Source of the DNA: Pristiophorus japonicus
Taxonomy: Eukaryota
Length of the DNA stretch: 64,000 nucleotides
Assembly: GCF_044704955.1 (NCBI RefSeq)
Contig: NC_091995.1
Span: 26,474,001-26,538,000, forward strand
Direction of reading: 5' to 3'
The position numbers were made by a program, and so were the translations under genes. Below the pieces are notes generated by a model. That model was not told the DNA's origin and did not search any database. It worked only from the letters and a program-made list of their open reading frames with translations. Shown here in pieces: positions 1-63,360 of this stretch (the stretch's first letter is position 1; each line of letters opens with the position of its first letter).

Positions 1-2986
1 CACTTGGTCCCAGAGGCACGACGCATTCACCACAAGGCGCGAGCGGTAGCTCACATGATGAGGAAGAGAGTGGAAATCGAGCTGGACAGACTGCAATGCG
101 AGGGCATCATCTCCCCAGTGGAATTCAGCGAGTGGGCCAGCCCGATTGTTCCAGTACTCAAAAGTGATGGCACGGTCAGGATTTGCGGCGATTATAAAGT
201 TACTATTAATCATTTCTCGCTACAGGACCAATACCCGCTACCTAAGGCAGACGACCTATTTGCGATGCTGCCAGGAGGCAAGACATTCACCAAGCTAGAC
301 CTGACTTTGGCCTACATGACGCAGGAGCTGGAGGAATCTTCGAAGGGCCTCACCTGCATCAACACGCACAAGGGACTGTTCATCTATAACAGAGGCCCAT
401 TTGTAATTCAGTCGGCTGCAGCGATCTTCCAGAGAAACATGGAGGGCCTACTCAAGTTGGTACCACTTTTTCAGGACGATATATTGGTCACGAGTCGGGA
501 CACTGTTGAGCACCTACAAAACCTGGAGGAGGTCCTCCAGCAACTGGATCGTGTAGGGCTGCAGCTGAATAGGTCAAAATGCATCTTCATGGCAACAGAA
601 GTGGAGTTTTTGGGGAGAAAGATCGCGGCGGACGGCATTCGGCCCACAGACACCAAGACAGAGGCTATTAGGAATTCGCCCAGGCCACAGAACACCACGG
701 AGCTGCGGTCATTCCTGGGACTCCTCAAATATTTTGGTAACTTCCTACCGGGGTTAAGTACCCTTTCAGAGCCCCTACATGTGTTATTGCGCAAAGGTGA
801 GAACTGGGTATGGGGAAAAAAACAAGTAATTGCTTTTGAGAAGGCCAGAAACAACAAGCTGCTTGTATTGTGTAACCCGTGTAAAAGACTTGTGCTAGCA
901 TGTGACGCATCGTGACATGGAGTCGGATGTGTATTATAACAAGCTAACATTGCGGTGAAGTTGCAACCTGTCGCTTATGCTTCCAGGAATTTGTCTAAGG
1001 CCGAGAGGGCCTACAGCATGATTGAGAAAGAGGCATTAGCGTGTGTGTTCGAGGTAAAGAAAATGCATCAGTACCTGTTTGGCCTCAAATTTGAGCTGGA
1101 AACCGATCACAAGCCCCTCACATCCCTGTTCGCTGAAAACAAGGGGATAAATACGAATGCCTCAGCCCGCATACAAAGGTGGGCCCTCGCGCTATCAGCG
1201 TATAACTATACCATCCGCCACAGGCCAGGCACCGAGAACTGTGCGGATGCTCTCAGTCGGCTACCATTGCACACCACGGGGATGGAAATGGCGCAGCCTG
1301 CAAACTTGTTGATGGTGGCGCAGCCCGCAGACTTGTTGATGGTCATGGAAGCATTTGAAAATGATAAATCAGCTGTCACGGCCCACCAGATTAGGACTTG
1401 GACCAGCCAAGATCCTCTGCTGTACCTAGTAAAAAAACTGTGTACTGCATGGGAGCTGGGCCAGCATCCCCGTTGAAATGCAAGAGCCAATCAAGCCGTT
1501 CCAGCGGCAAAAGGATGAGCTGTCCATTCAGGCAGACTGCCTGTTGTGGGGTAACCGCGTAGTGCTACCCAAAAAGGGCAGGGACATGTTCATCTCGGAT
1601 TTCCACAGCACACACCCGGGTATAGTAATGATGAAAGCGATAGCCAGATCCCACGTGTGATGGCCCGGTATCGACTCTGACTTAGATTCCTGTGTACGGC
1701 AGTACAGCGTATGTGCTCAGTTGAGCAATGCGCCCAGAGAGGCACCACTAAGTTTGTGGTCCTGGCCCTCCAGACCATGGTCGAGGATCCATGTCGACTC
1801 TGCGAGTTCGTTTCTCGGTAAAATGTTCCTGGTGGTGGTGGATGCTTTTTCAAAATGGATTGAATGTGAATTAATGTTGGGAAGCAGTGCCACTGCCACC
1901 ATTGAAAGCCTGAGGGCCATGTTTGCCACCCATGGCCTGCCTGACATACTGGTCAGTGACAACGGGCCATGTTTCACCAGTGCCGAATTTAAAGAATTCA
2001 TGACCCGCAATGGGATCAAACATGTCACCTCGGCCCCATTTAAAGCAGCCTCCAATGGGCAGGCAGAGCCGGCAGTACAAACCATCAAACAGCGCCTTAA
2101 ACGAGCCACAGAAGGCTCACTCCAAACCCGCCTGTCCCGAATACTGCTCAGCTACCGCACGAGACCCCACTCGCTCACAGGGGTGCCCCCGGCTGAGCTA
2201 CTCATGAAAAGAACACTTAAAACCAGACTCTCGCTGGTTCGCCCCAACCTGCATGATCAGGTAGAGAGCAGGCAGCAGCAACAAAAAGTAAACGATGGTC
2301 GCACCACTGTGTCACGGGAAATTGATCTGAATGACCCTGTGTATGTGCTAAACTATGGACATGGTCCCAAGTGGATCACGGGCACGGTGATAGCTAAAGA
2401 AGGGAGTAGGGTGTTTGTAGTTAAACTAGACAATGGAAAAATTTGCAGAAAGCACCTGGACCAAACGAGGCTGCGGTTCACAGACTGCCCTGAACAACCC
2501 ACAGCAGACACCACCTGTTTCGAGCCCACAACACACACCCAAAGGATCAATGACACCACGCCGCACCAGGAAATCGAACCCATCACGCCCAACAGCCCAG
2601 CAAGGCCAGGCTCACCCAGCAGCCCTGCAGGGCCAATAACACACCAGCCCAGCGAGGGCACAGCCAACACACCAGAACAGACATTTGTACCGAGGCGGTC
2701 CACCAGGAAAAGAAAGATTCCCGACCGCCTCACCTTGTAAATAGTTTTCACTTTGACTTTGGTGGGGGGGAGTGATGTTGTGTATCTGTAAAGCATGCAC
2801 TCCCATGTTCCGCCACCAGGGAGCACATCCCCTGAAGTCCCAAAGGAACCCAGCTTCCCTTGGGAGCACTGTATATAAGCCGGTCCCAAAGGCCTGTTCC
2901 TCACTCTGGAGTGTCTTATTAAAGACTGAGGTCACTGTTACTTTAACCTCCCTGTGTGCAGCCTCATCTGTGTTAGGAACACAATA
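1..2986 (+). mobile_element. Ty3/Gypsy LTR retrotransposon, 3' half (degenerate pol: RT-RNase H-integrase, PPT, 3' LTR)
   Basis: ORFs 4-915 (WASPIVPV, RICGDYK, KLDL, FQDD), 955-1476 (RNase H: PVAYASR, EKEALA, ETDHKPL) and 1478-2740 (integrase: HSTHPG zinc-finger remnant, WSRIHVD, LVSDNGPCF, SNGQAE, GPKW). RT-RH-IN order is the Gypsy order. Stops and frameshifts lie between the ORFs. Confidence 0.95.
2776..2986 (+). repeat. 3' LTR (~211 bp) of the Gypsy element
   Basis: Preceded by a purine tract GGTGGGGGGGAGTGA. Begins TGTTGTGT and ends ACACAATA (one mismatch from the perfect inverted ACACAACA). Contains TATATAA (~2872) and ATTAAA (~2918). Confidence 0.85.
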
Positions 2987-17326: not shown

Positions 17327-17769
17327 AACTTTAAAATCTGGATGACCCAAGGAGACCGGCAACTACTTGAAGCAGCCTAGGCATTAAAACATTTCATGTC
17401 ATCGCTGTTTCTTGTAATAGTTTTGAAGTCAGCGCTGCTGTTGAAATATAACACTGTTGCATTGCTGATACCTTCAGAAAGCAATGGTCACTGATAGTAA
17501 ACCGAGAATGATTCAGCAGTGAAATGGTTAAGGATCTACCAACTCAGCTGGAGAACCAGCTCAGCCTGTGGCCTGAGTTTAGGGGGGGAGGTGTGTGATG
17601 GTAGATTAATCCGTACAACTATACCTTTAACAGACATTGTATTATTTTGTGAAAAATCTGTCATTTCGGTTCAATCCATTTTAAGCAGATGTATTGCGAA
17701 ATAGAAATTATGGAACCGGTCTATAAAATGTTATGAATTAGATGCAATGCTCAAAATTCACTTTTGCCA

Positions 17770-17830
17770 TTGGTCACTTCCGCTGTTGCCTGCAAAGAAC
17801 CACGGGCTGCGAGACTGAATCACATGTAAT
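17770..17830 (+). promoter_or_regulatory. Putative promoter of the Ig receptor gene: ETS site (CACTTCCG) plus E-box (TCACATG)
   Basis: CACTTCCG at 17775-17782 and TCACATG at 17820-17826, 80-135 bp upstream of the ATG. The ETS core is retained at 21328, 24882 (CACTTCCA), 32653 and 47316. Confidence 0.5.
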
Positions 17831-17908
17831 AATGCCACTCCGCCCCAATCGGCACTGCTGGGTGTCCCGTTACTGTGATATCGGGGCGGCGGGTACCCGG
17901 ATCTCACT

Positions 17909-17981
17909 ATGTGCCAGAAAATAAACCTCCTTAAATTCACCAACGTTTTCCCTTTCATCAGTTATTTTATTTCCCTCTCCG
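17909..17981 (+). CDS. Ig-superfamily receptor copy A, exon 1 (leader MCQKINLLKFTNVFPFISYFISLS)
   Basis: ATG, 73 nt, strong phase-1 donor G|GTAAGT. Same 73-nt exon in copies B, C and E. Frame-compatible with exon 2. Confidence 0.8.
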
Positions 17982-18830
17982 GTAAGTTTTTTTCTCACTT
18001 CTAATATCAATGTGATCCTGTTTCTGAGTTTCCCCTTCACTCTGTGACTGTTTTACTGACTGTGTTTAATCGGGGCTGGGGTTCAATCGCTCACTGATCT
18101 AAAGTGAATGAAGCTCAACTCATTCCCTGAGATCTTCAGTCTCATTCAGTCGGGCTCCTGTGAACAGGTAGATCCCCCCTCACCACCTGCCCTCCAGTTA
18201 CTGTTCCACACTGGGAGTTCCCTCAACCTCTAACTGGATGTATTAATGAATTAACTGATCTCTGACAAGTCTTTAATTATTATTTATATACTAATGTATC
18301 AGATGTTCCCGTGTGTATCTTTTATCAAATGTGTAACATTGGCAGATGGGATCAATTGTTCTCTACCATGTCTATATTCTCACAACCCTCTGCATAAAAA
18401 TGTTTCTCCTGAATTACTTTAATCGATTCAATAGTTAAATCTGAATGGGCGGTGGAAGCAGATTCAACAATAAGATTCAAAGGGGAATTGAATATATAGT
18501 TGAAAAGGAAACATTTGCAGGGCTCCGGGGAGAGAGCGGGGGGAGTGGGATTAATTGGATACCACTTTCAAACAGCCGGCACAGACACGATGGGCCGAAT
18601 GGCCTCCCTCTGTGCGGTATGGATCTATGATTCTATAATTTCATGTTTCTCTGACTGGTCGTTATGTTCATTCGAGCCAATGTATTCTTTGCTGGTGCTG
18701 CAGGTATTTTGTGATTTCGAACTCATGGGATGCTTTATAACCAGACTCCTGATTTAAAACCTTCATAAGTAATTCTAAGCGGTTTTTTTTTCCTTTCTGA
18801 AGCTGATCTATTGTTTTGAATGTATTGCAG

Positions 18831-19220
18831 CATCTGGAAGCTGTGTTACTGTGAGCGTCGGTCAGAGAGAAGTGAGCGGGATTGTGAACCAGTCTGTCCT
18901 TCTCCCCGTCTCCTACTCCACACTTACTCCCTACTCCACTGTAAAGATAAAGTGGGTTTTATTCCCCGGAGACAGTCCATTAGTGACACTGACTCGATCA
19001 AACTGCTCTACCGACCCTGACAAACCCGGTTATACCAGTTCAGATTACCAGCGGGTCGCTCCTTCCCACAGGGAGAGAGTCGACATCTACCCGGAGAATG
19101 GATCCTTGTTGTTGTGGAATCTGCAGCCCAGTGACAGCGGCGTGTATGTGATATCTGTTTACAGTGGTGGGAACACAGCCAGTGAAGGGAATGTGACGTT
19201 AACAGTCTATCCCGGGACAG
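18831..19220 (+). CDS. Ig-superfamily receptor copy A, exon 2: single V-set domain (VSTM5/HEPACAM/CEACAM/CD2-like, no B-F disulfide)
   Basis: TTGCAG acceptor, 390 nt phase 1-1, CAG|GTAGG donor. VSGIVNQSVLLPVSY, C-strand W (KIKW), SHRERVDIYPENGSLLLWNLQPSDSGVYVISV, GNVTLTVY. Four N-x-S/T sequons. Confidence 0.9.
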
Positions 19221-19412
19221 GTAGGAATTCAGTCTGATTATTGAACCCATTTAATCCTCAGTATCCTTTGCTGATAGAGTAACATTATGTAGCTATACTC
19301 TACTTCTCGCTTTGAAACAAGGTGAATATTGCCAACAAATCGATAAAGAATAATTAAAGTCTGCCTTTTGAACCTAGTCAGGTTGCTGTAAATTATCAAA
19401 TTCTTGTTGCAG

Positions 19413-19720
19413 GCACTGAGCATCCGACCCGGAGCTGCACAGAGCAAGCGGAGACCACCGAACAACTCCCCGACCACCCACCCGCTCTCCTGCTCCGTGT
19501 GTTCATCTTTGGCGCTGTCACTGTGCTCGGGGCCTGCCTATACTTGTGTGTGAGCCGGAGATACAGAGCGACTGACAGCGGGAGAACTGCACCCATACCC
19601 GGGATCGCGCTGTTCAGGGGAGGGCAGCGGTTGGAGAATTCAATCCATTGGCAGTCCTGCTGGAACCGCAATAACTTCCTCAAAATGTTTCAACAACTTG
19701 TATTAATATACCGCCTTTAA
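19413..19720 (+). CDS. Ig-superfamily receptor copy A, exon 3: stalk, transmembrane helix with Arg, short cytoplasmic tail
   Basis: TTCTTGTTGCAG acceptor, in frame: GTEHPTRSCTEQAETTEQLPDHPP-ALLLRVFIFGAVTVLGACLYLCV-SRRYR..LIYRL*. The spliced CDS is 771 nt (256 aa). The 3' end is less certain (possible donor at 19550). Confidence 0.8.
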
Positions 19721-19955
19721 GGTAATAAACTGTCCCAAGGTGTTTCACGGGAGTATTATACAACAACATTTGACAAGCAACCAAGAAGGAGAAATCAGGG
19801 TAAATGAACAAAAGCTTGGCCGAAGTATTATGTTCAAAGGAGACATAAAGGAGGAAAGAGAGGTAGAGAGGCGGAGAGTTTTGAGGAGGAAGTTCCTGAG
19901 TTTCGGGTCTAGACGGCTGAAGGCAGGGCCACCAATAGTGGAGCGATTACAATCG
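19692..19955 (-). mobile_element. L2 LINE 3' fragment embedded in the duplicated unit (paralogues ~23660-23890, ~26105-26365, ~31020-31290)
   Basis: Minus-strand peptide of the 23.7-kb paralogue TIGGAAFSRLDPKLWN..SLASFKSLLKT matches the L2 ORF2 C-terminus. Confidence 0.7.
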
Positions 19956-20494
19956 GGGAGTAAAACCCTTGTTCTGAATTGTAAACTGGAACTAATGCGG
20001 TCCTGACCCCAGCGTAACTCTGGCGAAAGCGCCTATTGGAATCCCCCCGCTGTGAATTCCCGCCCTGCCCTATGCTCACTGCGGTTGTGAATCGCCCTAC
20101 CGACCCTTTTGTCTTTTGCCCACAAGCTTTTCACTGTGATTTCCCGGCCTGTTCTGTGAAGCGGGTTTTGCCGAGCCTCGCTCCCGGCCATCAGTTGCTC
20201 CAGTTTGTACAGCTCACGGCTCATTGACCACACCCAGTGTTATTGGAAGCACTGACCTGTCTATTATAGCGGTTACTGGTACCTGCCGACATGTGGACTT
20301 CAAGTAAAGAAAGAACACATGATCTCTCATTTAATGCTCAGTGTGCTGAGCACCTTAAACCCGAGAGCATTGGATTCAGATTCAGTCCTTTCACTGCCAC
20401 AGGATCATTGTGACACAAACAGCGGGCAAAGTGAGGGGGACAGAAATAATCTCTGGGTGTGGATCAATGTGGGAAGAAACAACTCGGATTTTCA

Positions 20495-20670
20495 CCTTTC
20501 ACAACCTCAGGACGGCACAAAGTCTCTCACAGACAATGAAGTAATTTACAGTGTAGTCACCGTTTAATGTCAGAAGATGCAGCAGCCAATGTGTGCTCAG
20601 CAATGTTCAAGATATTGCAAGGAGATAAATGTCTACATTGTTTTTAGTGATGTTAATTGAGGGGTATTGT
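20495..20670 (-). mobile_element. DeuSINE-type SINE 3' fragment within the duplicated unit (paralogues ~24050, ~26900, ~31825)
   Basis: CCTTTCACAACCTCAGGACG..CAATGAAGTA..AGTGTAGTCAC..GCAGCCAAT matches the reverse complement of the SINE tail at ~49990-50095. Confidence 0.7.
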
Positions 20671-21437: not shown

Positions 21438-23676
21438 ATGTGCAGAGAAATAAACCTCCTTCAATTCACCAAACATTTCATTTTCATCGGTTATTTTATT
21501 TCCCTCTCCGGTAAGTTTTTTTTCTCACTTCCAGTATCAATGTAATTCTGTTTCTGCGTTTCCCCTTGACTCTGTGTGACTGTTTTGCTGACTGTCTTTA
21601 ACCGGGACTGGGGTTCAGTCGCTCACTGATTTAAAGTGAATGAAGCTCAACTCATTCCCTGAGATCTTCAGTCTCATTCAGTCGGGCTCCTGTGAACAGG
21701 TAGATTCCCCCCTTACCAACTGGCCTCCAGTTACTGTTCCACACTGGGAGTTACCTCAACCTATAACTGTAGCTGGGATTTATTACTGAATTAACTGGTT
21801 TCTGACAAGTCTTTAATTATTATGTATTTACTAATGTATCAGATGTTCCCGTGTGTACCTTTTATCAAATGTGTAACATTGGCCGATTGGATCAATTGTT
21901 CTCTACCAAGTCTTTATTTAATGATTATAACATAGAATTGCATAGAATTTTCAGCACAGAATAGGCTATTTCGACAAACTGGTATAAGCCGTGGTTTACG
22001 CTCCTCATGCGCCTCCCCATAAAAAAGTCCTTCTATTCCTTTCTCCCTCATGTGTTTATCCAACTTCCCTTTAAATGCATCTATGCTGTTCAACTCAACA
22101 ATTCGCTGTGTTTGCGAGTTCCACATGCTCACCGCCCTCTGGGTAAAAATGTTTCTTCTGAATTCTATCGATTCAATCGTGACGATTTAATTATTGACGT
22201 CTCAAATGCTGTTGTTATCATCTGGGACGCTTTGCCTGAAAGGGAGTGGAAGCAGGTTCAACAATAAGCTTCAGCAAGGAATTGAATATATACTTGAAAA
22301 GGAAAAACATTGACGGTCTCTGGGGAAAGAGCCGGGTTGGGGGAGGTCGGGGGGCGGAGTGGTGTAAATTGCCTCGCTCTTTCAAAGAGCCAGGACCGGC
22401 ACGGTGGGCCGAATGGCCTCCTCCTGTGCCGCATGAATCTATCATTCTATAATTCCATACTTTCACTGGTCGTTATGTTCATTCTATCCAATGTATTCTT
22501 TGTTGGTGCTGCAGGTATTTTGTGATTTCAAACTCATGGGATGCTTTATAATCAGACTTCTGAGATAAACTCTTTGTAAGGAATTCTAAGCTGTTTTATT
22601 TCCCTTTCTGAAGCTGATTTATTGTTTTGAATGTGTTGCCGCCTCTGGAAGCCGTGTTACTCTGAACGTCGGTCAGAGAGAATTGAGCGGGACGATGAAC
22701 TAGTCTGTCCTTCTTCCCGTCTCCTACTCCACACTCACTCCCTGCTCCTCTTTAAGTGTCGAATGGGTTTTATTCCCCGGAGACACTCCATTTGCGATAC
22801 TAACCCGATCAAACTGCTTTGCCGACCCTGACAGACCCGGGTATACCTGTTCAGATTACCAGCGGGTCGCTCGTTCCTACAGGGAGAGAATCCACATCTA
22901 CCCGGAGAATGGATCCTTGTTACTGTGGGATCTGCAGCCCAGTGACAGTGGTGTGTATGTGATATCTGTTTTCAGTGGTGGGGACACAGACATTGAAGAC
23001 AATGTGACGTTAACAGTCTATCCTGGGGCAGGTAGGAATTCACAGTCTGATTATTGAACCAATTTAATCCTCAGTGCCCTTTGCTGATAGAGGAACATTA
23101 TTTAACTGTGTGCGCACTAGGTCCGTGCAGCAGAGCTTGGTCTCCAGTCGTCTTGATTAATCCTTGCCACTGGACCAAGACCTAGCTCTGTCAAGCCCGT
23201 GTGGTGGCTGGTGTGCAACGGCCAACCCACGTTAAAAAAATCCACGCACAGGCATCTTCCACCCGTCAACATCGGGATCTGGGAGCAAGGTGAAAATTGC
23301 CAGCAAATTGATAAAGAATGATTAAAGTCTGCCTTTTGAACCAAGTCGGGTTGCTGTAAATGATCACATTCTTGTTGCAGACACTGAGCATCCGACCCAG
23401 AGCTGCACAGAGCAAGCGGAGACCACCGGACAACTCCCCGCCCACCCACCCGCTCTCCTGCTCCGTGTGCTCATCTTTGGCGCTGTCACTGTGCTCGGGG
23501 CCTGCCTGTACTTGTGTGTGAGCCGGAGATACAGAGCGACTGACAGCGGGAGAACACCACCCATACCCGGGGATCGCGCTGTTCTGGGGTGGGCAACGGC
23601 TGGAGAATTCAATCCATTGGAAGTCCTGCTGGATCCGCAATACTTTCCTCACAATGTTTCAACAACTTGTATTTAG
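21438..23676 (+). pseudogene. Ig receptor copy B (exons 21438-21510, 22642-23031, 23381-23676)
   Basis: All three exons present. The exon-2 acceptor is CCG instead of CAG (22639-22641), and there is an in-frame TAG at 22701-22703. TM ALLLRVLIFGAVTVLGACLYLCV is retained. Confidence 0.88.
23110..23282. mobile_element. Unclassified ~170-bp insertion specific to intron 2 of copy B
   Basis: Absent from the equivalent intron of copies A (~19290-19320) and D (~30625-30650). Confidence 0.55.
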
Positions 23677-24983
23677 ATAGCGCCTTTAATACAGTAAAAC
23701 GTCACAAGGGGCTTCACAGGAGCGTCATAAACCACAATTTGACACCGTGCCAAAGCGGTAGGTTTTAAGAAGCGACTTAAAGGAGGCGAGCGAGTTAGAG
23801 AGGCGGAGAAGTTTAGGGATGTAATTCCAGAGTTTCGGGTCTAGACGGCTGAAGGCAGCGCCACCAATGGTGGAGCGATTACAATCGGGGATGAAAACCC
23901 TTGTTTTGAATTGTAAACTGGAACTCATGCGGTCCTGACCCTAGCGTAACTCTGGCGAAAACGCCACTTGGAATCCCTCCGATGTGAACTCCTGCCCTGC
24001 CCTCTGCCCGTTGCGGTTGTGAGTCGCCCTTCCGACCCTTTTTATACCTTCCACACCTTGAGGACGGCACAAAGTCTCGCACCGCCAATGAAGTACCTTA
24101 AAATATAGTCACCGTTCAATGTAAGGAAATGCAACAGCCAATGTGTGCCCAACAATATTCCAGAAATTGCAATGATATAAAAAGCCACATTGTTTTTAAT
24201 TATGTTAATTGAGGGGCAATGTCGAGATTGCAGATTAGATGTACAGAAATATTATCAAAATATCAATTTTTGTCATTGTTAAAGGGGCAGTATTTTTATA
24301 TATAAAGGATCTCAAACATTAAAAAAATCAGTTTGCAAATTAAAGTCAAAAGGACATCAACCCTGATGAAAGCTGCGTCTGTGTAATGTAAACCCGCCCT
24401 CAGCATGTCTTTTGTACTTTTGATCTCTTGCAATAACCAAGCTTAGGGCGTGAGATCTTAAAATAAACGAATGAAATCAAAAAAGATTTCTGTTCGATGT
24501 TATTATATGAACGAGATAAGGCCGCTTATTGAAAGCGGTGAAATGGTTAATGGGACAGCAGGCCCGGGATTTGCTCAGGAAGCACAGGATCATTGTACCT
24601 GGGGCGGTGGGATCTCTCCAGGACACATGGAGCTGGGGCTGGAGATAGAGAGAGATGGAGATGGACCCGGGCCCAGGCCTCTGTCGGTCTGCACACTCTA
24701 CCCGTTATTTTACTGATACCTCAAACATACCCACTTGAGTTGCTTTTGAAGAAACGATATTGACTGAAGGCTGAATTTATCATTTTAAATGTGAGATTTT
24801 TACTTGTCTCTGTTAACAATCTGATGATATTTTTTTCAATTTTGAATTGTTTTTGAAATAATTTCGCCACTTGATTCTGGTCACTTCCACTGTAAACCGA
24901 AATCACATGAGACGCACTCCTCCATTTAATTCAGTTCAAATCGGTGCCGCTTTATTGTGATATCGGGCGACCTGGAGCTCAAT

Positions 24984-26141
24984 TTGTGCAGGGAAAGAAA
25001 TCTCCTTAAATTCACCAACATGTTCCCTTTCAACAGTTATTTTATTTCCCTCTCCGGTAAATGTTTTTTCTTTCACGTCTAGTATCAATGTAATTCTGTC
25101 TCTGAGTTCCCCTTGACTCTGTGTGACTGTTTTGCTGACTGTCTTTAATCGGGGCTGGGGTTCAATCGCTCACTGATCTAAAGTGAATGAAGCACAACTC
25201 ATTCCCTGAGATCTTCAGTCTCATTCAGTCGGGCTCCTGTGAACAGGTAGATCCCCCCTCACCAACTGCCCTCCAGTTACTGTTCCACACTGGGAGTTCC
25301 CGCAACCTATAATTGTAGCTCGCATTTATTAATGAATTAACCGATCTCCCACAAAAAAAATAATTATTATTTATTTATTACTGTGTCTGATGTGCCCGTG
25401 TGTGTGTTTTATCAAGTGTGTAAAATTGGCAGATTGGATAAATTGAAATCTCCCAAGTCTTTATTTAATTATTATAATATAGAATTTACAGCACAGAATA
25501 GGCCATTTGGACAAACTGGTATTATGCTCCTCACGAGCCTCCCCATCAACATGTCCGTCTATTCCTTTCTCCCTCATGTGTTTATCCAACTTCCCTTTAA
25601 ATGCATCTATGCTGTTCAACTCAACAATTCGCTGTGAACGCGAATTCCACATACTCACCACCCTCTGGGTAAAAATGTTTCTCCTGAATTATATCGATTC
25701 AATAGTGACGATTTAATTATTAACCTCTCAAATGCTGTTGTTATGATCTGGGACGCATTGCCTGAAAGGGAGATGGAAGCAGGTTCAACAGTAAGCTTCA
25801 ATAAGGAATGGAGTATATAATTGAAAAGGAAAAACATTGAAGGTTTCTGGGGAAAGAGCGGGGGGAGTGGTGTAAATTGGATAGCTCTTTCAAAGAGTCA
25901 GGATCGGCACGGTGTGCCGAATGACCTCCTCCTGTGCCGCATTCTATCATTTCATGTTCTTTCACTGGTCGTTATGTCGACAGCGAGAGAACTCCACGCA
26001 CACCCGGGGATCGCACTGTTCAGGGGTGGGCAACGGCTGGAGAATTCAATCCATTGGAAGTCCTGCTGGAACCGCAATAACTTCCTCACAATGTTTCAAC
26101 AACCAACAACAACTTGCATTAATATAGCGCCGTTAAGTTAA
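24984..26141 (+). pseudogene. Ig receptor copy C (start codon lost; V and TM exons deleted)
   Basis: Exon 1 24984-25056 begins TTG. At ~25977 intron 1 is joined directly to the cytoplasmic part of exon 3 (GACAGCGAGAGAAC). Confidence 0.85.
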
Positions 26142-29185: not shown

Positions 29186-31050
29186 CCTCTGGAAGCCGTG
29201 TTACTGTGAGCGCCGGTCAGAGAGAAGTGAGCGGGATTGTGAACAATATACATAGATGACCTGGAAGAGGGGACAGAGTGTAGTGTAACAAAATTTGTAG
29301 ATGACACAAAGATTAGTGGGAAAGCGGGTTGTGTAGAGGACACAGAGAGGCTGCAAAGAGATTTAGATAGGTTAAGCGAATGGGCTAAGGTTTGGCAGAT
29401 GGAATACAATGTCGCAAAATGTGAGGTCATCCACCTTGGAAAAAAAAACAGGAAAAGGGAATATTATTTGAATGGGGAGAAATTACAACATGCTGAGGTG
29501 CAGAGGGACCTGGGGGTCCTTGTGCATGAATCACAAAAAGTTAGTTTGCAGGTGCAGCAGGTAATCAGGAAGGCGAATGGAATGTTGGCCTTCATTGCGA
29601 GAGGGATGGAGTACAAAAGCAGGGAGGTCCTGCTGCAACTGTACAGGGTATTGGTGAGGCCACACCCGGAGTACTGCGTGCGGTTTTGGTCACCTTACTT
29701 AAGGAAGGATATACTAGCTTTGGAGGAGGTACAGAGACGATTCACTAGGCTGATTCCGAAGATGAGGGGGTTACCTTATGAAGATAGATTGAGTAGACTG
29801 GGTTTTTACTCGTTGGAGTTCAGAAGGATGAGGGGTGATCTTATAGAAACATTTAAAATAATGAAAGGGATAGATAAGATAGAGGCAGAGCGGTTGTTTC
29901 CACTGGTCGGGGAGACTAGAACTAGGGGACACAGCCTCAAAATATGGGGGAGCCAATTTAAAACCGAGTTGAGAAGGAATTTCTTCTCCCAGAGGGTTGT
30001 GAATCTGTGGAATTCTCTGCCCAGGGAAGCAGTTGAGGCTACCTCATTGAATGTATTCAAATCACAGATAGATAGATTTTTAACCAATAAGGGAATTAAG
30101 GATTATGGGGAGCGGGCGGATAAGTGGAGCTGAGTCCACGGCCAGATCAGCCATGATCTTGTTGAGTGGTGGAGCAGGCTCGAGGGGCTAGATGGCCTAC
30201 ACCTGTTCCTAATTCTTATGTATGTCCTTCTCCCCGTCTCCTATTCCACAATCACTCCCTACTCCACTGTAAAGATAAAGTGGGTTTTATTCCCCGGAGA
30301 CACTCCATTAGTGACAGTGACCTGATCAAACTGCTCTGCCGACCTTGACAGACCCGGGTATACCTGTTCAGATTACCATCGGGTCGCTCCTTCCCACCAG
30401 GAGAGAGTCCACATCTACCTGGAGAATGGATCCTTGTAACTGTGGGATCTGCAGCCCAGTGACAGCGGCGTCTATGTGATATCTGTTTACAGTGGTGGGA
30501 ACATAGCCAGTGAAGGCAATGTGACGTTAACAGTCTATCCAGGGACAGGTAGGAATTCACAGTCTGATTATTGAACCCATTTAATCCTCAGTGTCCATTG
30601 CTGATAGAGGAACATTATTTAACTGTACTGCACTTGTCACTTGGAAACAAGCTGAATATTGCCAGCAAATTGATAAAGAATAATTAAAGTCTGCCTTTTG
30701 AACCTAGTCGGGTTGCTGTAAATGATCACATTCTTGTTGCAGGCACTGAGCATCCGACCCGGAGCTGCACAGAACAAGTGGAGACCACCGAACAACTCCC
30801 CGACCACACAACCGCTCTCCTGCTCCGTGTGCTCATCTTTGGCGCTGTCACTGTGCTCGGGGCCTGCCTGTACTTGTGAGTGAGCCGGAGATACAGAGCG
30901 ACTGAAGCGGGAGAACTCCACCCACACCCGGGATCGCGCTGTTCAGTGGTGGGCAACGGCTGGAGAATTCAATCCATTGGCAGTCCTGCTGGAACCGCAA
31001 TAACTTCCTCACAATGTTTCAACAACTTGTATTAATATAGCCCCTTTAAT
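29186..31050 (+). pseudogene. Ig receptor copy D (V exon split by CR1; multiple stops; no exon 1)
   Basis: V exon 29186-29244 and 30223-30548. Stops at 30323 (TGA) and 30437 (TAA). Exon 3 from 30743 has TGA at 30877. Confidence 0.88.
29245..30222 (+). mobile_element. Young 5'-truncated CR1 inserted into the V exon of copy D
   Basis: Uninterrupted 244-aa ORF 29399-30133, complete 3' UTR and TTCTTATGTATG tail. Confidence 0.93.
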
Positions 31051-32762: not shown

Positions 32763-33260
32763 GTGTGCAGGGAAATGAATCTCTTTCAATTCACCAACAT
32801 TTTCACTTTCATCAGTTATTTTACTTCCCTCTCCGGTATTCTGTTTCTAAGTTCCGCTTGACTCTGTGTGAATGTTTTGCTGACTGTCTTTAATCGGGGC
32901 TCGAGTTCAATCGCTCACTGATCTAAAATGAATGAAGCTCAACTCTTTCCATGAGATCTTCAGTCTCATTCAGTCAGGCTCCTGTGAACAGGTAGATTCC
33001 CCCTCACCACCTGCCCTCCGGTTACTGTCAGTTCCCGCAACCTATAACTGTAGCTGGGAATTATCAATGAATTAACTGATCTCGCACAAGTCTTTAATTA
33101 TTATTCTTTACGATCGTGTCAGATATCCTCGTGTGTATGTTTTACTGGTACCTGCCCAGAGATAGACTTCAAATAAAGAATGAACAAATGAACTCTCATT
33201 TAATGCTGAGCAAATTAAACCCGAGAGGGTTGCATTCAGTTTTAATTCCTTCATTGTCAA
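32763..33260 (+). pseudogene. Ig receptor copy E (exon 1 with GTG start; V and TM exons deleted)
   Basis: Exon 1 homologue 32763-32835. At ~33140 intron 1 joins sequence homologous to ~20275-20400 (TTACTGGTACCTGCC..), including AATAAA at ~33172. Confidence 0.8.
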
Positions 33261-46956: not shown

Positions 46957-48350
46957 ATGAACGAGACGAGGCCGCTTATTGAAAGCGGTGAAATGGTTAA
47001 TGGGACAGCAGGCCCGGGCCCTGCTCAGGTAGCACAGGATCATTGTACCTGGGGCAGTGGGATCTCTCCAGAGCACATGGAGCTGGGGCTGGAGATAGCG
47101 AGAGACGGAGATGGACCCGGGCCCAGGCCTCTGTCGGTCTGCACACTCTGCCCATTATTTTACTGATACCTGACTCGATGTGTTTTTGAAGAAACCATAT
47201 TGACTGAATGCTGAATTTATCATTTTAAATGTGAAATCATTACTTTTATTTGTTAACCATCTGATAATCTTTATTTTGAAATGTCTTTGAAATAATTTCG
47301 CCACTTGGTTCTGGTCACTTCCGCTGCAAACCCAAACCCCGGATCACATGAGAAGCTTCCCTCCGTTTCATTTGGTCCTGCTCCGTGTCGCTTTATTGTG
47401 ATACTGGGGCCACCCGGAGCTCACTTTGTGCAGAGAAATAAATCTTTTTCAATTCACCAACTTTTTATCTTTCATCAGTTATTTCCGTTGCGCGATTTTC
47501 TCTGCATTTCTAGAACAACAACTTGCATTTATATATTTATATATTTATTCACATAGTAAAATGTTCCAATGCGCTTCACAGGAACGTTATCAAACATTTT
47601 ACACCCACCCACATATGGAGATATTAGGGAAGACTTGGTCAAAGAGCGTCTTAAAGGAGTAAAGAGAAGTAATGATACATAGAGGTTTCGGGAGGGAATT
47701 CTAGAGCTTAGGGCCTTGGCAGCTGAAGCACAGCCGCCAATGGTTGAGGAAATTTAAAATGGAGGGATTTGAATACAAGGATGAGAATTTTAAAATTGAG
47801 ACATTGCATAACTAGGAGCCAATGTAGATCAGCGAGCACAGAGGTGATGGGAGAATGGGACGTGGTGCGAGTTTGGACATGGGGAGCCAAAGATTGGATG
47901 GCCTCAAATTTACGGAGGCCGGCAGGAGTGCATTGGAACAGTCAAGTCCAGAGGTAATAAGGGCATGAATGAGAGTTTTAGTAGCAGATGAGCTGAGACA
48001 GGGGCCGAGTCGAGCGATGTTCCAGAGGTGGAAATAGGTGGTCTTAGTGATGGCGTGGATAAAAGTAACTCTACTTCTTAGTTCCCGTGAGACCTTGTGA
48101 ATGTTTTGCTGACTGTGTTAAATCGGGGCTGAGATCTTCAGTCCATTCAGTCGGGCTCCAGTGAACAGGTAGATTCCCCCTCACCACCTGCCCTCCAGTT
48201 ACTGTTCCACACTGGGAGTTACCTCAACCTCGAACTGTAGCTGGGATTTATTAATGAATTAACCAATCTCCCACAAGTCTTTATTTAATGATAGATGTTC
48301 ACGTCTTGTCACGTGGAGCTGTGGCTGGAGGTAGACATAGAGATGGAGAA
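46957..48350 (+). pseudogene. Ig receptor copy F remnant (upstream block, promoter, truncated exon 1 with TTG at 47426, intron-1 block 48075-48295)
   Basis: Homology to 20960-21830. Interrupted by an L2 fragment. Confidence 0.8.
47512..48060 (-). mobile_element. L2 LINE 3' fragment
   Basis: SPITSVLADLHWLLV.QCLNFKILILVFKSLH, the typical L2 ORF2 C-terminal motif. Confidence 0.85.
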
Positions 48351-51249: not shown

Positions 51250-51584
51250 TAAACACAATATAATTAACAATAAAAGTATGTAACTTAAAGTAACTATAAT
51301 CTGCTGTGCTTTTTGGACAGACAGCTGTCCGTCCAGCCCCGAAGCGCCCCCGCCGTCCTTCACTTTTTGACTGACAGGCGACAAGACCCGCCCCTGTCAA
51401 GCTCCACACCCCCCCCGGCCCCGAATCATTGCCCACCTGGTGCCGAGATGTAGGACCTGAGCCCCATACTCCGCTGATTCCCTCGGTGACTCGCTCCCCC
51501 CAGGACTCGCTAGGCCGACCGGGCCTCCCGCTGAGCTACGAGCCCTGAGCGGCGGGCAGTCAGGAGTCGGAGGGCTTTGGTGCC

Positions 51585-52968
51585 GAGAGAGAGAGAGGTA
51601 GGGGGTAGGGAGGGAGAGAGAGAGAGAGAGAGAGAGGCGTGGGAGTGGGGATGGAGAGAGAGAGAGAGAGAGGGTGGGGAGGGAGAGAGAGAGAGGGTGG
51701 GTAGGGAGGGAGAGAGAGAGAGGGTGGGTAGGGAGGGGGAGAGATAGGCGAGGGGTGGGGAGGGAGAGAGAGAGGCGTTGGGGTTGGAGGAAGAGGAGAG
51801 AGGCGTGGGGTGGGTAGGGAGAGAGAGAGGCAGTGGGTGGGGAGGGAGAGGAGCGAGGCAGGGGGTGGGGAGAGAGAGGCTGGGGGTGGATGAAAGAGAG
51901 GTTGGGGAGGGGGAGGGAGAGAGAGGCAGTGGGTGGGGGGAGGGAGAGGAGAGAGGCAGTGGTTGGGGAGGGAGAGGCAGTGGTTGGGGAGGGAGAGGCA
52001 GTGGGTGGGGGGAGAGAGAGGCAGTGGGTGGGGAGGGAGAGAGAGAGGCAGTGGGTGGGGAGGGAGAGAGAGAGGCAGTGGGTGGGGAGGGAGAGGGGAG
52101 AGGCTGGGGGTGGATGAGAGGGAGAGGCGGGGGGTGGGGAGAGAGAGGCAGTGGGTGGGGGGAGAGAGAGGCAGTGGGTGGGGAGGGAGAGAGAGAGGCA
52201 GTGGGTGGGGAGGGAGAGGGGAGAGGCTGGGGGTGGATGAGAGGGAGAGGCGGGGGGTGGGGAGAGAGAGCGGGGCAGTGGGTGGGGGGAGGGAGAGGAG
52301 AGAGGCAGTGGGTGGGGGGAGGGAGAGGAGAGAGGCAGTGGGTGGGGGGAGGGAGAGGCAGTGGGTGGGGAGGGAGAGAAAGAGGCAGTGGGTGGAGAGG
52401 GGAGAGGCTGGGGGTGGATGAAAGAGAGAGGCAGTGGGTGGGGAGGGAGAGAAAGAGGCAGTGGGTGGAGAGGGGAGAGGCTGGGGGTGGATGAGAGGGA
52501 GAGGCGGGGGGTGGGGAGAGAGAGAGGCAGTGGGTGGGGGGAGGGAGAGAGGCAGTAGGTGGGGGGAGGGAGAGGAGAGAGGCAGTGGGTGGGGGGAGGG
52601 AGAGGCAGTGGGTGGGGGGAGGGAGAGGAGAGAGGCAGTGGGTGGGGGGAGGGAGAGGCAGTGGGTGGGGAGGGAGAGAAAGAGGCAGTGGGTGGAGAGG
52701 GGAGAGGCTGGGGGTGGATGAAAGAGAGAGGCGGGGGGTGGGGAGGGAGAGAGAGAGAGTCAGTGGGTGGGGAGGGAGAGGAGAGAGGCAGTGGGTGGGG
52801 AGGGAGAGGGGAGAGGCTGGGGGTGGATGAGAGAGAGAGGCGGGGGGTGGGGAGGGAGAGAGAGAGGCAGTGGGTGGGGAGAGAGAGGCGGGGGGTGGAA
52901 GAGAGAGAGAGACTGTGGGGTGAGGGGGAGAGAGCGAGAGACTGTGGGGTGAGGGGGAGAGAGCGAGA
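51585..52968. repeat. G/A-rich minisatellite (GAGAGGCAGTGGGTGGGGAGG-type units)
   Basis: Direct reading. Confidence 0.92.
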
Positions 52969-54947
52969 GGTTGGAGGGGTGGCCGGGAGTTGGTAGCGGG
53001 GAGGGTGTGGTACCCCAATCGTCATCCCTGACGTTGAAGCCGGGGGACTTGGAGCTGTTTTTCGGCCCGGTCTCGCCATGCCTCCCGGTGCCTGGGGCAG
53101 AGGTGGACGCCCGTCCTCTGCCGCTTCCCGACCCGGCATCCCAGGAGGAGCTTAGGAGGGACTCCTCTGCCGACGATCCTGGGGGTGGGATCGGGGTGGA
53201 GGTAGGGCCGGATGGTGTGGCCGGGCCGTTTGCCGTATCCCATGGGTCGACGGAGCGGCTGCTGGCGGCGACCTCCCGGAGGGGGACGGGGACTCATTGG
53301 GGAGTGCGGGAGAAGATTTGGAGTCCATCGCCAGTGAGGTGGTGGATCTCCTTGTGCCCGCCGCCGAGTCCCCCCTCACTCCTGCCAAGGAACTCCAGGA
53401 CTTTTTGGCGCAATGCCAGGGTCGCCGCAACAGAGCCCATCTGGCCCTGGACAAATGGCCCGAGCCGGCGCTGCTCATCAGGTCCATCCGCGCCGCCGTT
53501 AAAACCATGGCCGCGGTCGGGCTCTTATCAAAACCGGAAAGCCTTGAGCTGCCCCAGCTCACAACGTTCCTTGTTGGGTTGCTTAAGGAGTAGAGGTCAT
53601 CAAACAACTTCACTCCCCCCCCCCCCTCCTATCCCCACCATAGTTTAAGGTAGAGATTGCACTATGCTCTTGTCATGAAGATAACCATAGCCAGCCTCAA
53701 CATCAATAGCGGCAGAGAGGCAGGTCGTAGATTTAACAATTTTTCGCACATTTGCGGTGTGCTTCCTGCAAGAAACCCACACCGTTCCGGGAGACAAGAC
53801 CACGTGGCTCCTGGAATGGCAACGAGAGGTCCGCATGAGCCACCTCACTGCCACTTCTTGTGAGGTGGCTATCTTGCTGGCCCCACATTTTCAGCCAAAG
53901 ATCTTGGGAGTCGAGGAGCCTGTGCCAGGCCCTTGCTCCATGTCATGGTTCGCCTGGGGGACGTGCCGCACCATTTAGTGAACGTGTACAGCCCCCAGCC
54001 CGGCCCGCAGCAAGTGCACTTCTTCGAAGAAGTGTCCATTCTTCTAGGTTCCGTCGACGTCGGCGACTACATTGTCCTCGGGGGGGATTTTAACTGCACC
54101 CTTGAGGCGAGGAACCGCTCCAGTGCCCCGCAGAGCATGACTGCGATAGAGAAGTTGAGCGACCTGTTCGGGTCCTTCGACTTGGTGGACGTCTGGCGAA
54201 ATCTCCATCCCGACTCCAGCGCCTTTACTTGGGTGAGGCCTGGAAGAGGATGGTCCAGAATCGACCGCCTTTACGTGTCTCGGGCGTACGTCTCCTGCGT
54301 TCTGGCGGCCTCCATGTGGCCAGCGGCGTGTTCGGACCACCACCTGGTGCGGGCGGAGCTCGCTCCGCTCTGCGCGAGGACGGGGTCCGCGTACTGGCAC
54401 TTTAACAACCAGCTGCTGGAGGATGAGCGGTTCCAGGATTCGTTCCGTCGCTTCTGGGCCAACTGGAGAAGGAAGCAGGGGGGGGGCTTCCCCTCCTTGA
54501 GGTTAAGGTGGGACATCTCTTCTGTCAAAAGTATGCGAAAGGGTTGCCCGTGAGGCGGGTGGCCAGGGTGGGGTGCCTGGTGAAGGAGGTGCTCGACCAG
54601 GAAGCCCGTCTGGGTCAAGTCGTCGAGGACCCGGCCCTGCGGACGGTGTAGGAAGCGAAGAAGGCCGTGCTAAAGGACCTGCAGCTCGTCGGGTTCGGAG
54701 GCTCATTCGTGAGGTTGCGGATCTGGTTCCTTCGGGACCAAGACTGCGGCTCCCCCTTCTTCTATTCGCTAGAAAAAAGATAGGGGGTCCGTAAGCAGCT
54801 CTTGACGCTGTTGGCCGACGATGGATCCCTGGTCTCGGATCCGGAGGGCATCAGTATCAGGGCCCGAGAATATTACGGGGCTCTGTTCTCTCCGGATCCG
54901 TCCAGCGAGGAAGCGCGTAGTGTTTTGTGGGAGGACCTGCTGAAGGT

Positions 54948-56080
54948 CATAGAAACATAGAAAATAGGTGCAGGACTAGGCCATTCGGCCCTTCTAGCCT
55001 GCACCGCCATTCAATGAGTTCATGGCTGAACATTCAACTTCAGTACCCCATTCCTGCTTTCTCGCCATACCCCTTGATCCCCCTAGTAGTAAGGACCTCA
55101 TCTAACTCCTTTTTGAATATATTTAGTGAATTGGCCTCAACAACTTTCTGTGGTAGAGAATTCCACAGGTTCACCACTCTCTGGGTGAAGAAGTTCCTCC
55201 GCATCTCGGTCCTAAATGGCTTACCCCTTATCCTTAGACTGTGACCTCTGGTTCTGGACTTCCCCAACATTGAGAATATTCTTCCTGCATCTAACCTGTC
55301 TAACCCCGTCAGAATTTTAAATGTTTCTATGAGGTCCCCTCTCATTCTTCTGAACTCCAGTGAATACAAGCCCAGTTGATCCAGTCTTTCTTGATAGGTC
55401 AGTCCAGCCATCCCGGGAATCAGTCTGGTGAACCTTCGCTGCACTCCCTCAATAGCAAGAATGTCCTTCCTCAGGTTAGGAGACCAAAACTGTACACAAT
55501 ACTCCAGGTGTGGCCTCACCAATGCCCTGTACAACTGTAGCAACACCTCCCTGCCCCTGTACGCAAATCCCCTTGCTATGAAGGCCAACATGCCATTTGC
55601 TTTCTTAACCGCCTGCTGCACCTGCATGCCAACCTTCAATGACTGATGTACCATGACACCCAGGTCTCTTTGCACCTCCCCTTTTCCTAATCTGTCACCA
55701 TTCAGATAATAGTCTGTCTCTCTGTTTTTACCACCAAAGTGGATAACCTCACATTTATCCACATTATACTTCATCTGCCATGCATTTGCCCACTCACCTA
55801 ACCTATCCAAGTCGCTCTGCAGCCTCACAGCATCCTCCTCGCAGCTCACACTGCCACCCAATTTAGTGTCATCCGCAAATTTGGAGATACTACATTTAAT
55901 CCCCTCATCTAAATCATTAATGTACAGTGTAAACAGCTGGGGCCCCAGCACAGAACCTTGCGGTACCCCACTAGTCACTGCCTGCCATTCTGAAAAGTAC
56001 CCATTTACTCCTACTCTTTGCTTCCTGTCTGACAACCAGTTCTCAATCCACATCAGTACACTACCCCTAATCCCATGTGC
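54948..56080 (-). mobile_element. Young CR1 inserted into Tx1 ORF2
   Basis: Uninterrupted 337-aa ORF 55040-56053 (FADD) and CATAGAAACATAGAAA tail. The Tx1 sequence resumes on both sides (..GAAGGTCA | GCCCGGAG..). Confidence 0.95.

Positions 56081-63313: not shown

Positions 63314-63360
<47 letters not shown>

What the first reader, a model, noticed from the sequence alone, without database searches (positions are those of the whole stretch)
17909..19720. Intact single-V-domain Ig receptor with a transmembrane arginine: candidate activating immune receptor of an uncharacterised family
Seen: three phase-compatible exons give a 256-aa type I membrane protein that the ORF track shows only in pieces. 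The V domain lacks the B-F cysteines and has the R-V..NGSL.L..L..DSG.Y.I pattern of VSTM5/HEPACAM/CEACAM/CD2-type domains. The stalk has a cysteine (possible homodimer). The TM begins LLLR, retained in copies A, B and D. Known: an arginine near the outer end of the TM is the signature of receptors that pair with the ITAM adaptors FcR-gamma/CD3-zeta (NKp46, GPVI, OSCAR, LILRA, FcalphaRI). Inference: a chondrichthyan activating receptor combining a CD2/CEACAM-like ectodomain with this TM signature.
Basis: partly seen in the sequence, partly recalled or inferred. Interest (0 to 1): 0.8.

Follow-up and report, generated by a model that had tools for sequence, protein, structure and literature searches.

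The report
Shark activating-type single-V immune receptor gene
This is an intact but unconfirmed shark gene for a small cell-surface receptor with one antibody-like domain and a membrane arginine. It looks like the activating partner of an unstudied inhibitory receptor family found from sharks to birds and platypus.

Summary
The three-exon, 256-codon model is real. It has a leader, a V-set Ig domain without the canonical cysteine pair, and a stalk, membrane segment and tail, with consensus splice sites.

The same exon layout occurs in annotated "uncharacterized" genes of other sharks and a skate. Most of those carry an uncharged membrane segment and an ITIM tail. A minority (small-spotted catshark, epaulette shark, bamboo shark, little skate) carry the window's type of membrane exon, with the arginine invariant.

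Within a species the two types share 91-98% of the V domain. Between species the arginine types share only 62-84%. That is the paired activating/inhibitory receptor pattern, so "candidate activating receptor of an uncharacterised family" is reasonable.

Caveats:
- No RNA run was listed, and no protein from this genome appeared in the searches.
- The copy has lost one cysteine of a family-specific pair.
- It heads a tandem array of five decayed copies.
- Its long tail and stalk cysteine are not conserved.
- The family is not shark-only, and it resembles CEACAM and JAML only weakly.
- Adaptor pairing is inferred, not shown.

The scan has noted analogous paired arrays of other families in this genome, but not this family.

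The parts
17909..17981 (+). Exon 1: start codon and leader peptide (MCQKINLLKFTNVFPFISYFISLS + first base of Ala), phase-1 donor G|GTAAGT
   Evidence: The leader is homologous to those of annotated Heterodontus, Heptranchias and Carcharodon proteins.
18831..19220 (+). Exon 2: V-set Ig domain, 129 full codons, no canonical B-F disulfide, four N-X-S/T sequons
   Evidence: Pfam PF07686 E 3.6e-11. AF2 pLDDT 88. 58-74% identity to shark orthologues.
19413..19720 (+). Exon 3: stalk, membrane segment, 56-residue tail and stop codon
   Evidence: Orthologous to the membrane exon of S. canicula LOC119976513 (E 2e-13) and C. punctatum P0002 (E 6e-5).
19484..19552 (+). Predicted membrane segment ALLLRVFIFGAVTVLGACLYLCV, flanked by PP outside and SRRYR inside
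   Evidence: Best Kyte-Doolittle windows of 19, 21 and 23 residues.
19496..19498 (+). Arginine codon (CGT), residue 5 of the 23-residue hydrophobic segment
   Evidence: Invariant in copies A, B and D and in the S. canicula, H. ocellatum, C. punctatum and L. erinacea arginine-type proteins.
19436..19438 (+). Stalk cysteine codon
   Evidence: Present in copies A, B and D and in C. punctatum. Absent in H. ocellatum, S. canicula and L. erinacea.
19037..19039 (+). Ser codon (AGT) where the family has the second cysteine of its C58-C69 pair. Copies B and D have TGT here.
21438..23686 (+). Copy B: pseudogene. It has an ATG leader, a V exon with an in-frame TAG, an intact arginine membrane segment, and a 1-base insertion in the tail.
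24984..26102 (+). Copy C: remnant. The leader exon has CTG instead of ATG, only the tail part of exon 3 remains, and there is no V exon.
29188..31037 (+). Copy D: pseudogene. A roughly 1-kb insertion encoding a reverse-transcriptase-like ORF splits the V exon. There are two stops in the V exon, one stop in the membrane segment, and a 1-base deletion.
32763..32834 (+). Copy E: leader exon only (GTG instead of ATG)
47426..47485 (+). Copy F: leader-exon remnant (CTG instead of ATG)

Best explanation
Copy A (17909-19720) is the one intact member of a roughly 3.5-kb tandem array of arginine-type genes. These genes belong to an old, unnamed single-V-domain receptor family.

The conserved core member of that family in sharks and rays is an inhibitory receptor. 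It has an uncharged membrane segment and a tail with LTYSxL (an ITIM) plus a second IYAF tyrosine motif.

The window's type keeps nearly the same ligand-binding V domain. Its membrane exon places an arginine about one helical turn below the outer membrane face, and it has no tyrosine signalling motif.

Most likely mechanism (inferred):
- The arginine bonds to the paired aspartates of a dimeric ITAM adaptor of the CD3-zeta / FcR-gamma type inside the membrane.
- Binding of the same ligand, or of a pathogen mimic of it, then activates the cell instead of inhibiting it.

Shown here: the gene structure, the homology, the conservation of the arginine, and the species-wise homogenised V domains.

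Inferred: expression, membrane placement of the arginine, adaptor pairing, and immune-cell function.
For: - The ORF is intact with consensus splice sites.
- Both exon junctions reproduce the junctions of annotated orthologues...YFISLSA|SGS... and ...TVY..T|(D/G)TE....
- The V-set domain folds confidently.
- It retains all 16 invariant family positions and 7 of the 8 near-invariant ones.
- The membrane exon is orthologous to those of S. canicula, H. ocellatum, C. punctatum and L. erinacea short-form proteins. R, G, TV, G and L are conserved in register.
- V-domain identity between arginine-type and ITIM-type is 91-98% within a species. Between species, arginine-type to arginine-type is 62-84%.
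- Paralogues B and D, at comparable divergence, each carry 2-5 disabling lesions; copy A carries none.
- An arginine near the top of the membrane segment is how CD89, NKp46, NKp30 and TCR-alpha bind gamma or zeta dimers (PMC13107469).
Against: - No RNA run was listed for this stretch.
- No protein from this genome appeared in three word searches that did find the family in 15 or more other species. The gene may be unannotated or silent.
- Copy A alone among the 14 close relatives has lost Cys69 of the family-specific Cys58-Cys69 pair, and it has gained an odd cysteine at exon-2 residue 4.
- dN/dS among the window copies is 0.6-1.0, so it is uninformative.
- The 56-residue tail is not conserved. 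Carpet sharks stop after 12 residues, and the catshark model diverges after LYLC.
- The arginine lies near the boundary. It could snorkel to the surface, leaving an 18-residue hydrophobic core.
- One 2014 survey found no FcR-gamma in sharks (PMC4016189).
- No ITIM partner lies in the window.
Confidence: 0.55

Rival explanations
1. Copy A is a pseudogene in waiting. It would be the last member of a decaying array to keep an open frame, not expressed or not functional, with the Cys69-to-Ser change as its first lesion.
For: - Five of the six copies are dead or fragmentary.
- Cys69 is lost.
- No RNA run was listed and no annotated protein was found.
- dN/dS is near 1.
- The tail runs 45 codons beyond where orthologues stop.
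Against: - There are no stops or frameshifts in 256 codons, while B and D have 2-5 each.
- All splice sites and the ATG are intact, whereas copies C, E and F have lost the ATG.
- All other conserved V-domain positions are kept.
- An AATAAA follows the stop codon.
Confidence: 0.3
2. The gene is expressed but the arginine is not an adaptor contact. It would sit at the membrane surface, and the protein would act as a tail-less decoy or adhesion molecule that competes with the ITIM partner for ligand without signalling.
For: - The arginine is only 4 residues from the PP boundary. The core after it is 18 hydrophobic residues, which is enough to span a membrane.
- CEACAM-like families elsewhere make activating members with their own ITAM tails, not membrane arginines (PMC5112662).
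- No FcR-gamma was reported in sharks in 2014.
Against: - The arginine and its register relative to G..TV.G..L are invariant between sharks and a skate, while the neighbouring residues vary.
- Many more distant family members (stingray, lungfish, frog, gecko) also combine xxR at the start of the membrane segment with short tails.
- The placement matches CD89 and NKp46.
Confidence: 0.1
3. The real transcript uses the internal GT after LYLC (19550) and splices to downstream exons. This would give a different tail, possibly the VIYSVV-ending ORF at 20403-20567, and so a receptor with both a membrane arginine and an ITIM.
For: - TGT|GTGAGC is a good phase-0 donor and is conserved in copies A and B.
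- The S. canicula model diverges from the window exactly after LYLC.
- The ORF at 20403-20567 follows a cag acceptor in phase 0 and ends in an ITIM-like motif.
Against: - All substitutions in that ORF between copies A, C and D are nonsynonymous or nonsense.
- Its high conservation belongs to a 700-bp block, not to the ORF.
- Copy B has deleted the acceptor.
- The ORF has no similarity to the family's real ITIM exons or to the catshark tail.
- Carpet-shark models read through as the window model does.
Confidence: 0.05

Closest known systems
Scyliorhinus canicula LOC119976513 (P0024), with Hemiscyllium ocellatum LOC132832679 X2 (P0001), a Chiloscyllium punctatum protein (P0002) and Leucoraja erinacea LOC129716097 (P0031)
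   Same: Same three-part layout: leader, cysteine-pair-less V domain, and a membrane exon with LL(L/V)R...G..TV.G..L. The V domain is 52-69% identical. The membrane exon scores E 2e-13 against the catshark.
   Different: All are database predictions without any study. Their tails differ in length and sequence. They keep Cys69, which the window copy has lost. Only one of them has the stalk cysteine.
CEACAM family (CEACAM1/CEACAM3 paired receptors; Xenopus Ceacam paired receptors, PMC5112662)
   Same: - The N-terminal V-like domain lacks the B-F disulfide.
- The motif R..(I/L)YPNGSLL(I/L)..(V/L)...D.G.Y..(V/I) is shared. The family profile hits CEACAM6, 1, 5, 8 and 7 at E 4e-8 to 1e-4.
- Exons are phase 1.
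- The inhibitory partner has an ITIM plus a second tyrosine motif about 20 residues later.
- V exons are homogenised between the inhibitory and activating genes.
- NCBI auto-names some relatives CEACAM3-, CEACAM4- or CEACAM5-like.
   Different: - The match covers only the C''-to-G half of the domain, and JAML scores better.
- The structure search does not single out CEACAM.
- There are no IgC2 domains.
- Activating CEACAMs carry their own ITAM or ITAM-like tail, not a membrane arginine.
- Synteny was not testable.
NKp46, NKp30, Fc-alpha-RI (CD89), GPVI, OSCAR, LILRA
   Same: Type I Ig receptors with an arginine in the top third of the membrane segment and no signalling tail. The sequence context LLR(M/V) resembles NKp46 and CD89 (for the principle; the sequences are from my own knowledge).
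   Different: There is no sequence relationship in the ectodomain: those receptors have C2-type or other V domains. Adaptor binding is proven for them and untested here.
HEPACAM / JAML / CD48 (CD2 family)
   Same: They have V domains with the NGSL...L...D.G.Y motif. JAML is the best solved-structure sequence match (E 3e-10), and CD48 scores 7e-6. One shark relative is auto-named HEPACAM-like.
   Different: These are two-domain proteins. JAML and HEPACAM keep the canonical disulfide. There is no orthology evidence, and identity is 25% or less.

Membership tests
Paired activating/inhibitory Ig-like receptors (functional class) | Two gene types with closely similar ectodomains but opposite signalling halves | tested here: met
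   In three other sharks the arginine-type and ITIM-type share 91-98% of the V domain, while arginine types of different species share 62-84%. The ITIM partner of the window's own species was not seen.
Paired activating/inhibitory Ig-like receptors (functional class) | The activating member has a basic residue in the membrane segment and lacks tyrosine signalling motifs | tested here: met
   Arg is residue 5 of the 23-residue hydrophobic segment. The tail has no ITIM, ITSM or ITAM.
Paired activating/inhibitory Ig-like receptors (functional class) | Physical association with an Asp-bearing ITAM adaptor, and an activating signal | not testable with these tools
   This needs co-expression and co-precipitation. 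The genome could not be searched for adaptors.
Paired activating/inhibitory Ig-like receptors (functional class) | Expressed, correctly spliced mRNA in leukocytes | tested here: inconclusive
CEACAM family | N-terminal IgV-like domain without the intradomain disulfide | tested here: met
   Val26 and Ile107 occupy the cysteine sites. No cysteine occurs at either site in 107 relatives.
CEACAM family | Specific sequence relationship of the N domain to CEACAM N domains above other V-set families | tested here: inconclusive
   The profile hits CEACAM6 at 4e-8, but only over half the domain, and JAML scores 3e-10. Foldseek and VIA rank generic V-set domains first.
CEACAM family | Location in the conserved CEACAM gene neighbourhood | not testable with these tools
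   The window holds only transposon debris besides the array. No wider genome access was available.
CEACAM family | The activating paired member signals through its own ITAM or ITAM-like tail | tested here: not met
   The tail has no YxxL/I pair. It relies on a membrane arginine instead (PMC5112662).
Unnamed elasmobranch single-V receptor family (LOC119975690 / LOC119976513 type) | V domain with SVLLPVSY, the NCS...(Y)NCSD cysteine pair, YPENGSLLL and DSGVYVISVY motifs, and the same exon phases | tested here: met
   V-domain identity is 58-74%, and all motifs are present except the second cysteine.

The most novel reading that the evidence does not exclude
This would be a working activating receptor of a gnathostome-wide, never-studied paired receptor family that is distantly CEACAM-like. 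The arginine-type membrane exon would date back at least to the shark-skate ancestor. That would show that arginine-to-aspartate coupling of innate Ig receptors to zeta/gamma-type adaptors was already in use in cartilaginous fish. It would run against the view that the FcR-gamma module arose with bony fish.
Probability: 0.3. Interest if true: 0.6.

Novelty: new member of a known kind. Interest (0 to 1): 0.45.

Why it matters
Paired activating and inhibitory receptors are a main way in which vertebrate innate immunity keeps pace with pathogens. Very few have been described in cartilaginous fish.

This locus, together with its annotated but unstudied relatives, defines a compact one-domain family. 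The family has a conserved ITIM gene and a conserved arginine-type partner in sharks and skates, and it has relatives up to birds and platypus.

It gives a simple test system for two questions. Did membrane arginine-adaptor coupling exist in the earliest jawed vertebrates? Which adaptor served it?

For this particular copy the value is limited until expression is shown.

Tried and rejected
- **RNA evidence.** The look-up of sequencing runs listed no RNA run, so read laying could not be used.
- **Joined product.** Every search used single exons or database proteins. An exact look-up of the full protein was therefore not possible.
- **One-to-one orthology with a characterised gene** (HEPACAM, VSTM5, CD2, CEACAM): rejected. 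The best solved-structure sequence hits are partial and weak, and all close relatives are unnamed.
- **ITIM-type membrane or tail exons in the window:** none by tblastn at E below 50 with seven family tails, and none by motif scan.
- **A transposable-element origin for the end of the ORF:** I suspected it, but blastn finds that stretch only in the paralogous copies within the window, so I make no such claim.
- **The ITIM-like ORF at 20403-20567 as a conserved exon:** rejected as coding-constrained.
- **Hydrophobicity figures.** They are not used as evidence.

Full report
**1. Observation**

Reading 17500-20200 confirms the three exons.
- Exon 1 is 17909-17981: ATG, 24 codons plus one base, donor G|GTAAGT.
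- Exon 2 is 18831-19220: it follows a long pyrimidine tract and cag, and has donor AG|GTAGGA.
- Exon 3 is 19413-19720: it follows ttgcag and ends with stop TAA at 19718-19720. An AATAAA follows at 19724-19729.

All junctions are phase 1. The pieces add up to 24+1+129+1+101 = 256 codons. The mechanical ORF list shows only fragments of this.

Everything below rests on single exons or on database proteins.

**2. The domain**

Exon 2 matches Pfam V-set at E 3.6e-11. AlphaFold2, run on exon 2 with a 14-sequence family alignment, gives a nine-strand V fold (pLDDT 88, pTM 0.82).

The canonical cysteine sites are Val26 and Ile107 (exon-2 numbering, Trp41 as landmark). None of 107 aligned relatives has a cysteine at either site.

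The family instead has its own pair, Cys58 and Cys69 (SNCS...YNCSD). Both are present in 73 of 107 relatives and in all 13 close relatives. Copy A has Ser69 (AGT, where copies B and D have TGT) and a new Cys at residue 4 (TGT, where B and D have CGT).

Structure searches return generic V-set domains:
- VCBP3 V1 at Z 16.6.
- Then a plateau at Z 13-14.6: B7-H3, VSIG4, TCR-delta, MPZ, Siglec-15, nectins, TIGIT, CD48.

A family profile against solved-structure sequences hits JAML (3e-10), CEACAM6, 1, 5, 8 and 7 (4e-8 to 1e-4) and CD48 (7e-6). All these matches cover only the C''-to-G half of the domain.

**3. Membrane exon**

Exon 3 encodes TEHPTRSCTEQAETTEQLPDHPP-ALLLRVFIFGAVTVLGACLYLCV-SRRYR..., followed by 51 further residues without any ITIM, ITSM or ITAM.

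The best Kyte-Doolittle windows of 19, 21 and 23 residues all include the arginine. The 23-residue window starts at ALLL, which makes Arg its residue 5. Excluding the arginine leaves 18 hydrophobic residues, so a surface-snorkelling arginine cannot be ruled out from sequence alone.

**4. Copies in the window**

The gene heads a tandem array with a unit of about 3.5 kb.

| Copy | Coordinates | State |
|---|---|---|
| B | 21438-23686 | TAG in the V exon; one-base insertion in the tail |
| C | 24984-26102 | CTG for ATG; no V exon |
| D | 29188-31037 | V exon split by an insertion with a reverse-transcriptase-like ORF; three stops; one-base deletion |
| E | 32763-32834 | Leader remnant without ATG |
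| F | 47426-47485 | Leader remnant without ATG |

- LLLR is kept in copies A, B and D.
- dN/dS among copies is 0.6-1.0 in the V exon. This is uninformative because the partners are dead.
- Similarity along the unit is mosaic: about 88-92% in the V exon, 96-97% in the membrane part of exon 3, and 90-97% in a 700-bp downstream block. That suggests gene conversion among copies.

**5. Relatives**

Word searches were run with exon 2, with a bamboo-shark protein and with a catshark protein. A full HMMER search used a family profile and found 1731 representatives at E 1e-3 or better and 373 at 1e-10 or better.

Together they show a large family: sharks, skates and rays, chimaera, gar, lungfish, frogs, newt, turtle, gecko, birds and platypus. 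Every member I looked up is "uncharacterized protein" or carries an automatic CEACAM3/4/5-like, HEPACAM-like or CD276-like name.

In sharks the common form has an uncharged membrane segment and a tail with LTYSxLxW (an ITIM) and IYAF. It occurs in white shark, basking shark, two catsharks, Mustelus, Heterodontus, Heptranchias and three carpet sharks.

A second form has the window's kind of membrane exon:
- S. canicula LOC119976513: AALLLRGSIVGGVTVLGACLYLC.
- H. ocellatum LOC132832679 X2 and a C. punctatum protein: ILL(L/V)RVSTL.FVAV.GASLYWYVSRRCRE, stopping 12 residues after the membrane.
- L. erinacea LOC129716097: FGLRAVVLGSLTVFGICL.

The arginine and the G, TV, G and L positions are in register in all of them. 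The window exon matches the catshark exon at E 2e-13.

More distant members in stingray, lungfish, frog and gecko also combine an arginine at the start of the membrane segment with short tails.

**6. Paired-receptor signature**

V-domain identity between the arginine form and the ITIM form of the same species is 92% (H. ocellatum), 98% (C. punctatum) and 91% (S. canicula). Arginine forms of different species share only 62-84%.

The membrane exons, by contrast, group by type across species. This is what gene conversion of the ligand-binding exon between an inhibitory gene and its activating partner produces.

No ITIM-type exon lies in this window, so the partner, if it exists in this species, is elsewhere.

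**7. Mechanism**

From established knowledge, an arginine near the top of the membrane segment binds the aspartate pair of zeta-zeta, gamma-gamma or zeta-gamma dimers in TCR-alpha, CD89, NKp46 and NKp30 (PMC13107469).

By analogy the window protein would need such an adaptor for surface expression and would deliver an ITAM signal. This step is inferred.

A 2014 survey reported no FcR-gamma in shark data of that time (PMC4016189). CD3-zeta or an unrecognised relative is therefore the more cautious candidate.

**8. Doubts about this copy**

- No RNA run was listed.
- No protein from this genome turned up in searches that found the family in many other species.
- Cys69 is lost.
- The stalk cysteine is not conserved. 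It is absent in the catshark, the epaulette shark and the skate.
- The long tail is unconserved.
- A good internal donor (TGT|GTGAGC at 19549/19550) coincides with the point where the catshark model diverges, so the 3' end is uncertain.

Against decay: zero disabling lesions in copy A versus 2-5 in B and D, an intact ATG and splice sites, and retention of every other conserved V-domain position.

**9. Literature**

CEACAM relatives in cartilaginous fish are mentioned only as a skate EST (PMC4079198) and in passing (PMC5112662). Xenopus Ceacam paired receptors use ITAM tails.

I found no paper on this family or its LOC identifiers.

**10. Earlier notes of this scan**

These notes are unchecked.
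- They call the genome the Japanese sawshark.
- They describe analogous paired arrays of Siglec-like, SIRP-like and CD4/LAG-3-like families on other pieces.
- None concerns this family.
- A first-reader note on a possible ITIM exon at 20403-20567 was checked in part and not supported as a constrained coding exon.

**11. Verdict**

This is a plausible activating-type member of a real, old, unstudied paired receptor family, but this copy's expression and function are open.

It is a new member of a known kind. Interest is moderate.

Noticed in passing
window 19909-20608: A roughly 700-bp block downstream of exon 3 is 90-97% identical between units A, C and D, while its flanks are 55-88% identical. 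This looks like a gene-conversion tract or some other constraint.
   Followed up: partly
window 20403-20567: This ORF follows a cag acceptor and ends NEVIYSVVTV-stop. It is phase-compatible with the internal donor at 19550. However, all differences from copies C and D are nonsynonymous or nonsense, copy B has deleted the acceptor region, and the ORF has no similarity to the family's true ITIM exons.
   Followed up: partly
window 19547-19555: An internal phase-0 donor-like site TGT|GTGAGC sits right after LYLC of the membrane segment. It is conserved in copies A and B (TGA|GTGAGT-like in D). The S. canicula gene model diverges from the window sequence exactly here.
   Followed up: partly
window 29245-30208: An insertion carrying a reverse-transcriptase-like ORF (29399-30133, 244 aa) splits the V exon of copy D.
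   Followed up: no
window 4-2740: Retrotransposon pol remnants: reverse-transcriptase-, RNase H- and integrase-like ORFs on the + strand. Many further LINE-type reverse-transcriptase fragments are scattered through the window.
   Followed up: no
window 51400-63900: Very long low-complexity ORFs on both strands (Pro/Ser/Leu-rich on one strand, Gly/Glu/Arg-rich on the other) come from a simple repeat. An N run at 59325-59465 lies inside it and was left untouched.
   Followed up: no
P0007, P0011, P0013 (database proteins): Several sharks have annotated isoforms of the ITIM gene that skip the membrane exon and join the V domain directly to the ITIM tail. These would be soluble or cytosolic forms.
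   Followed up: no
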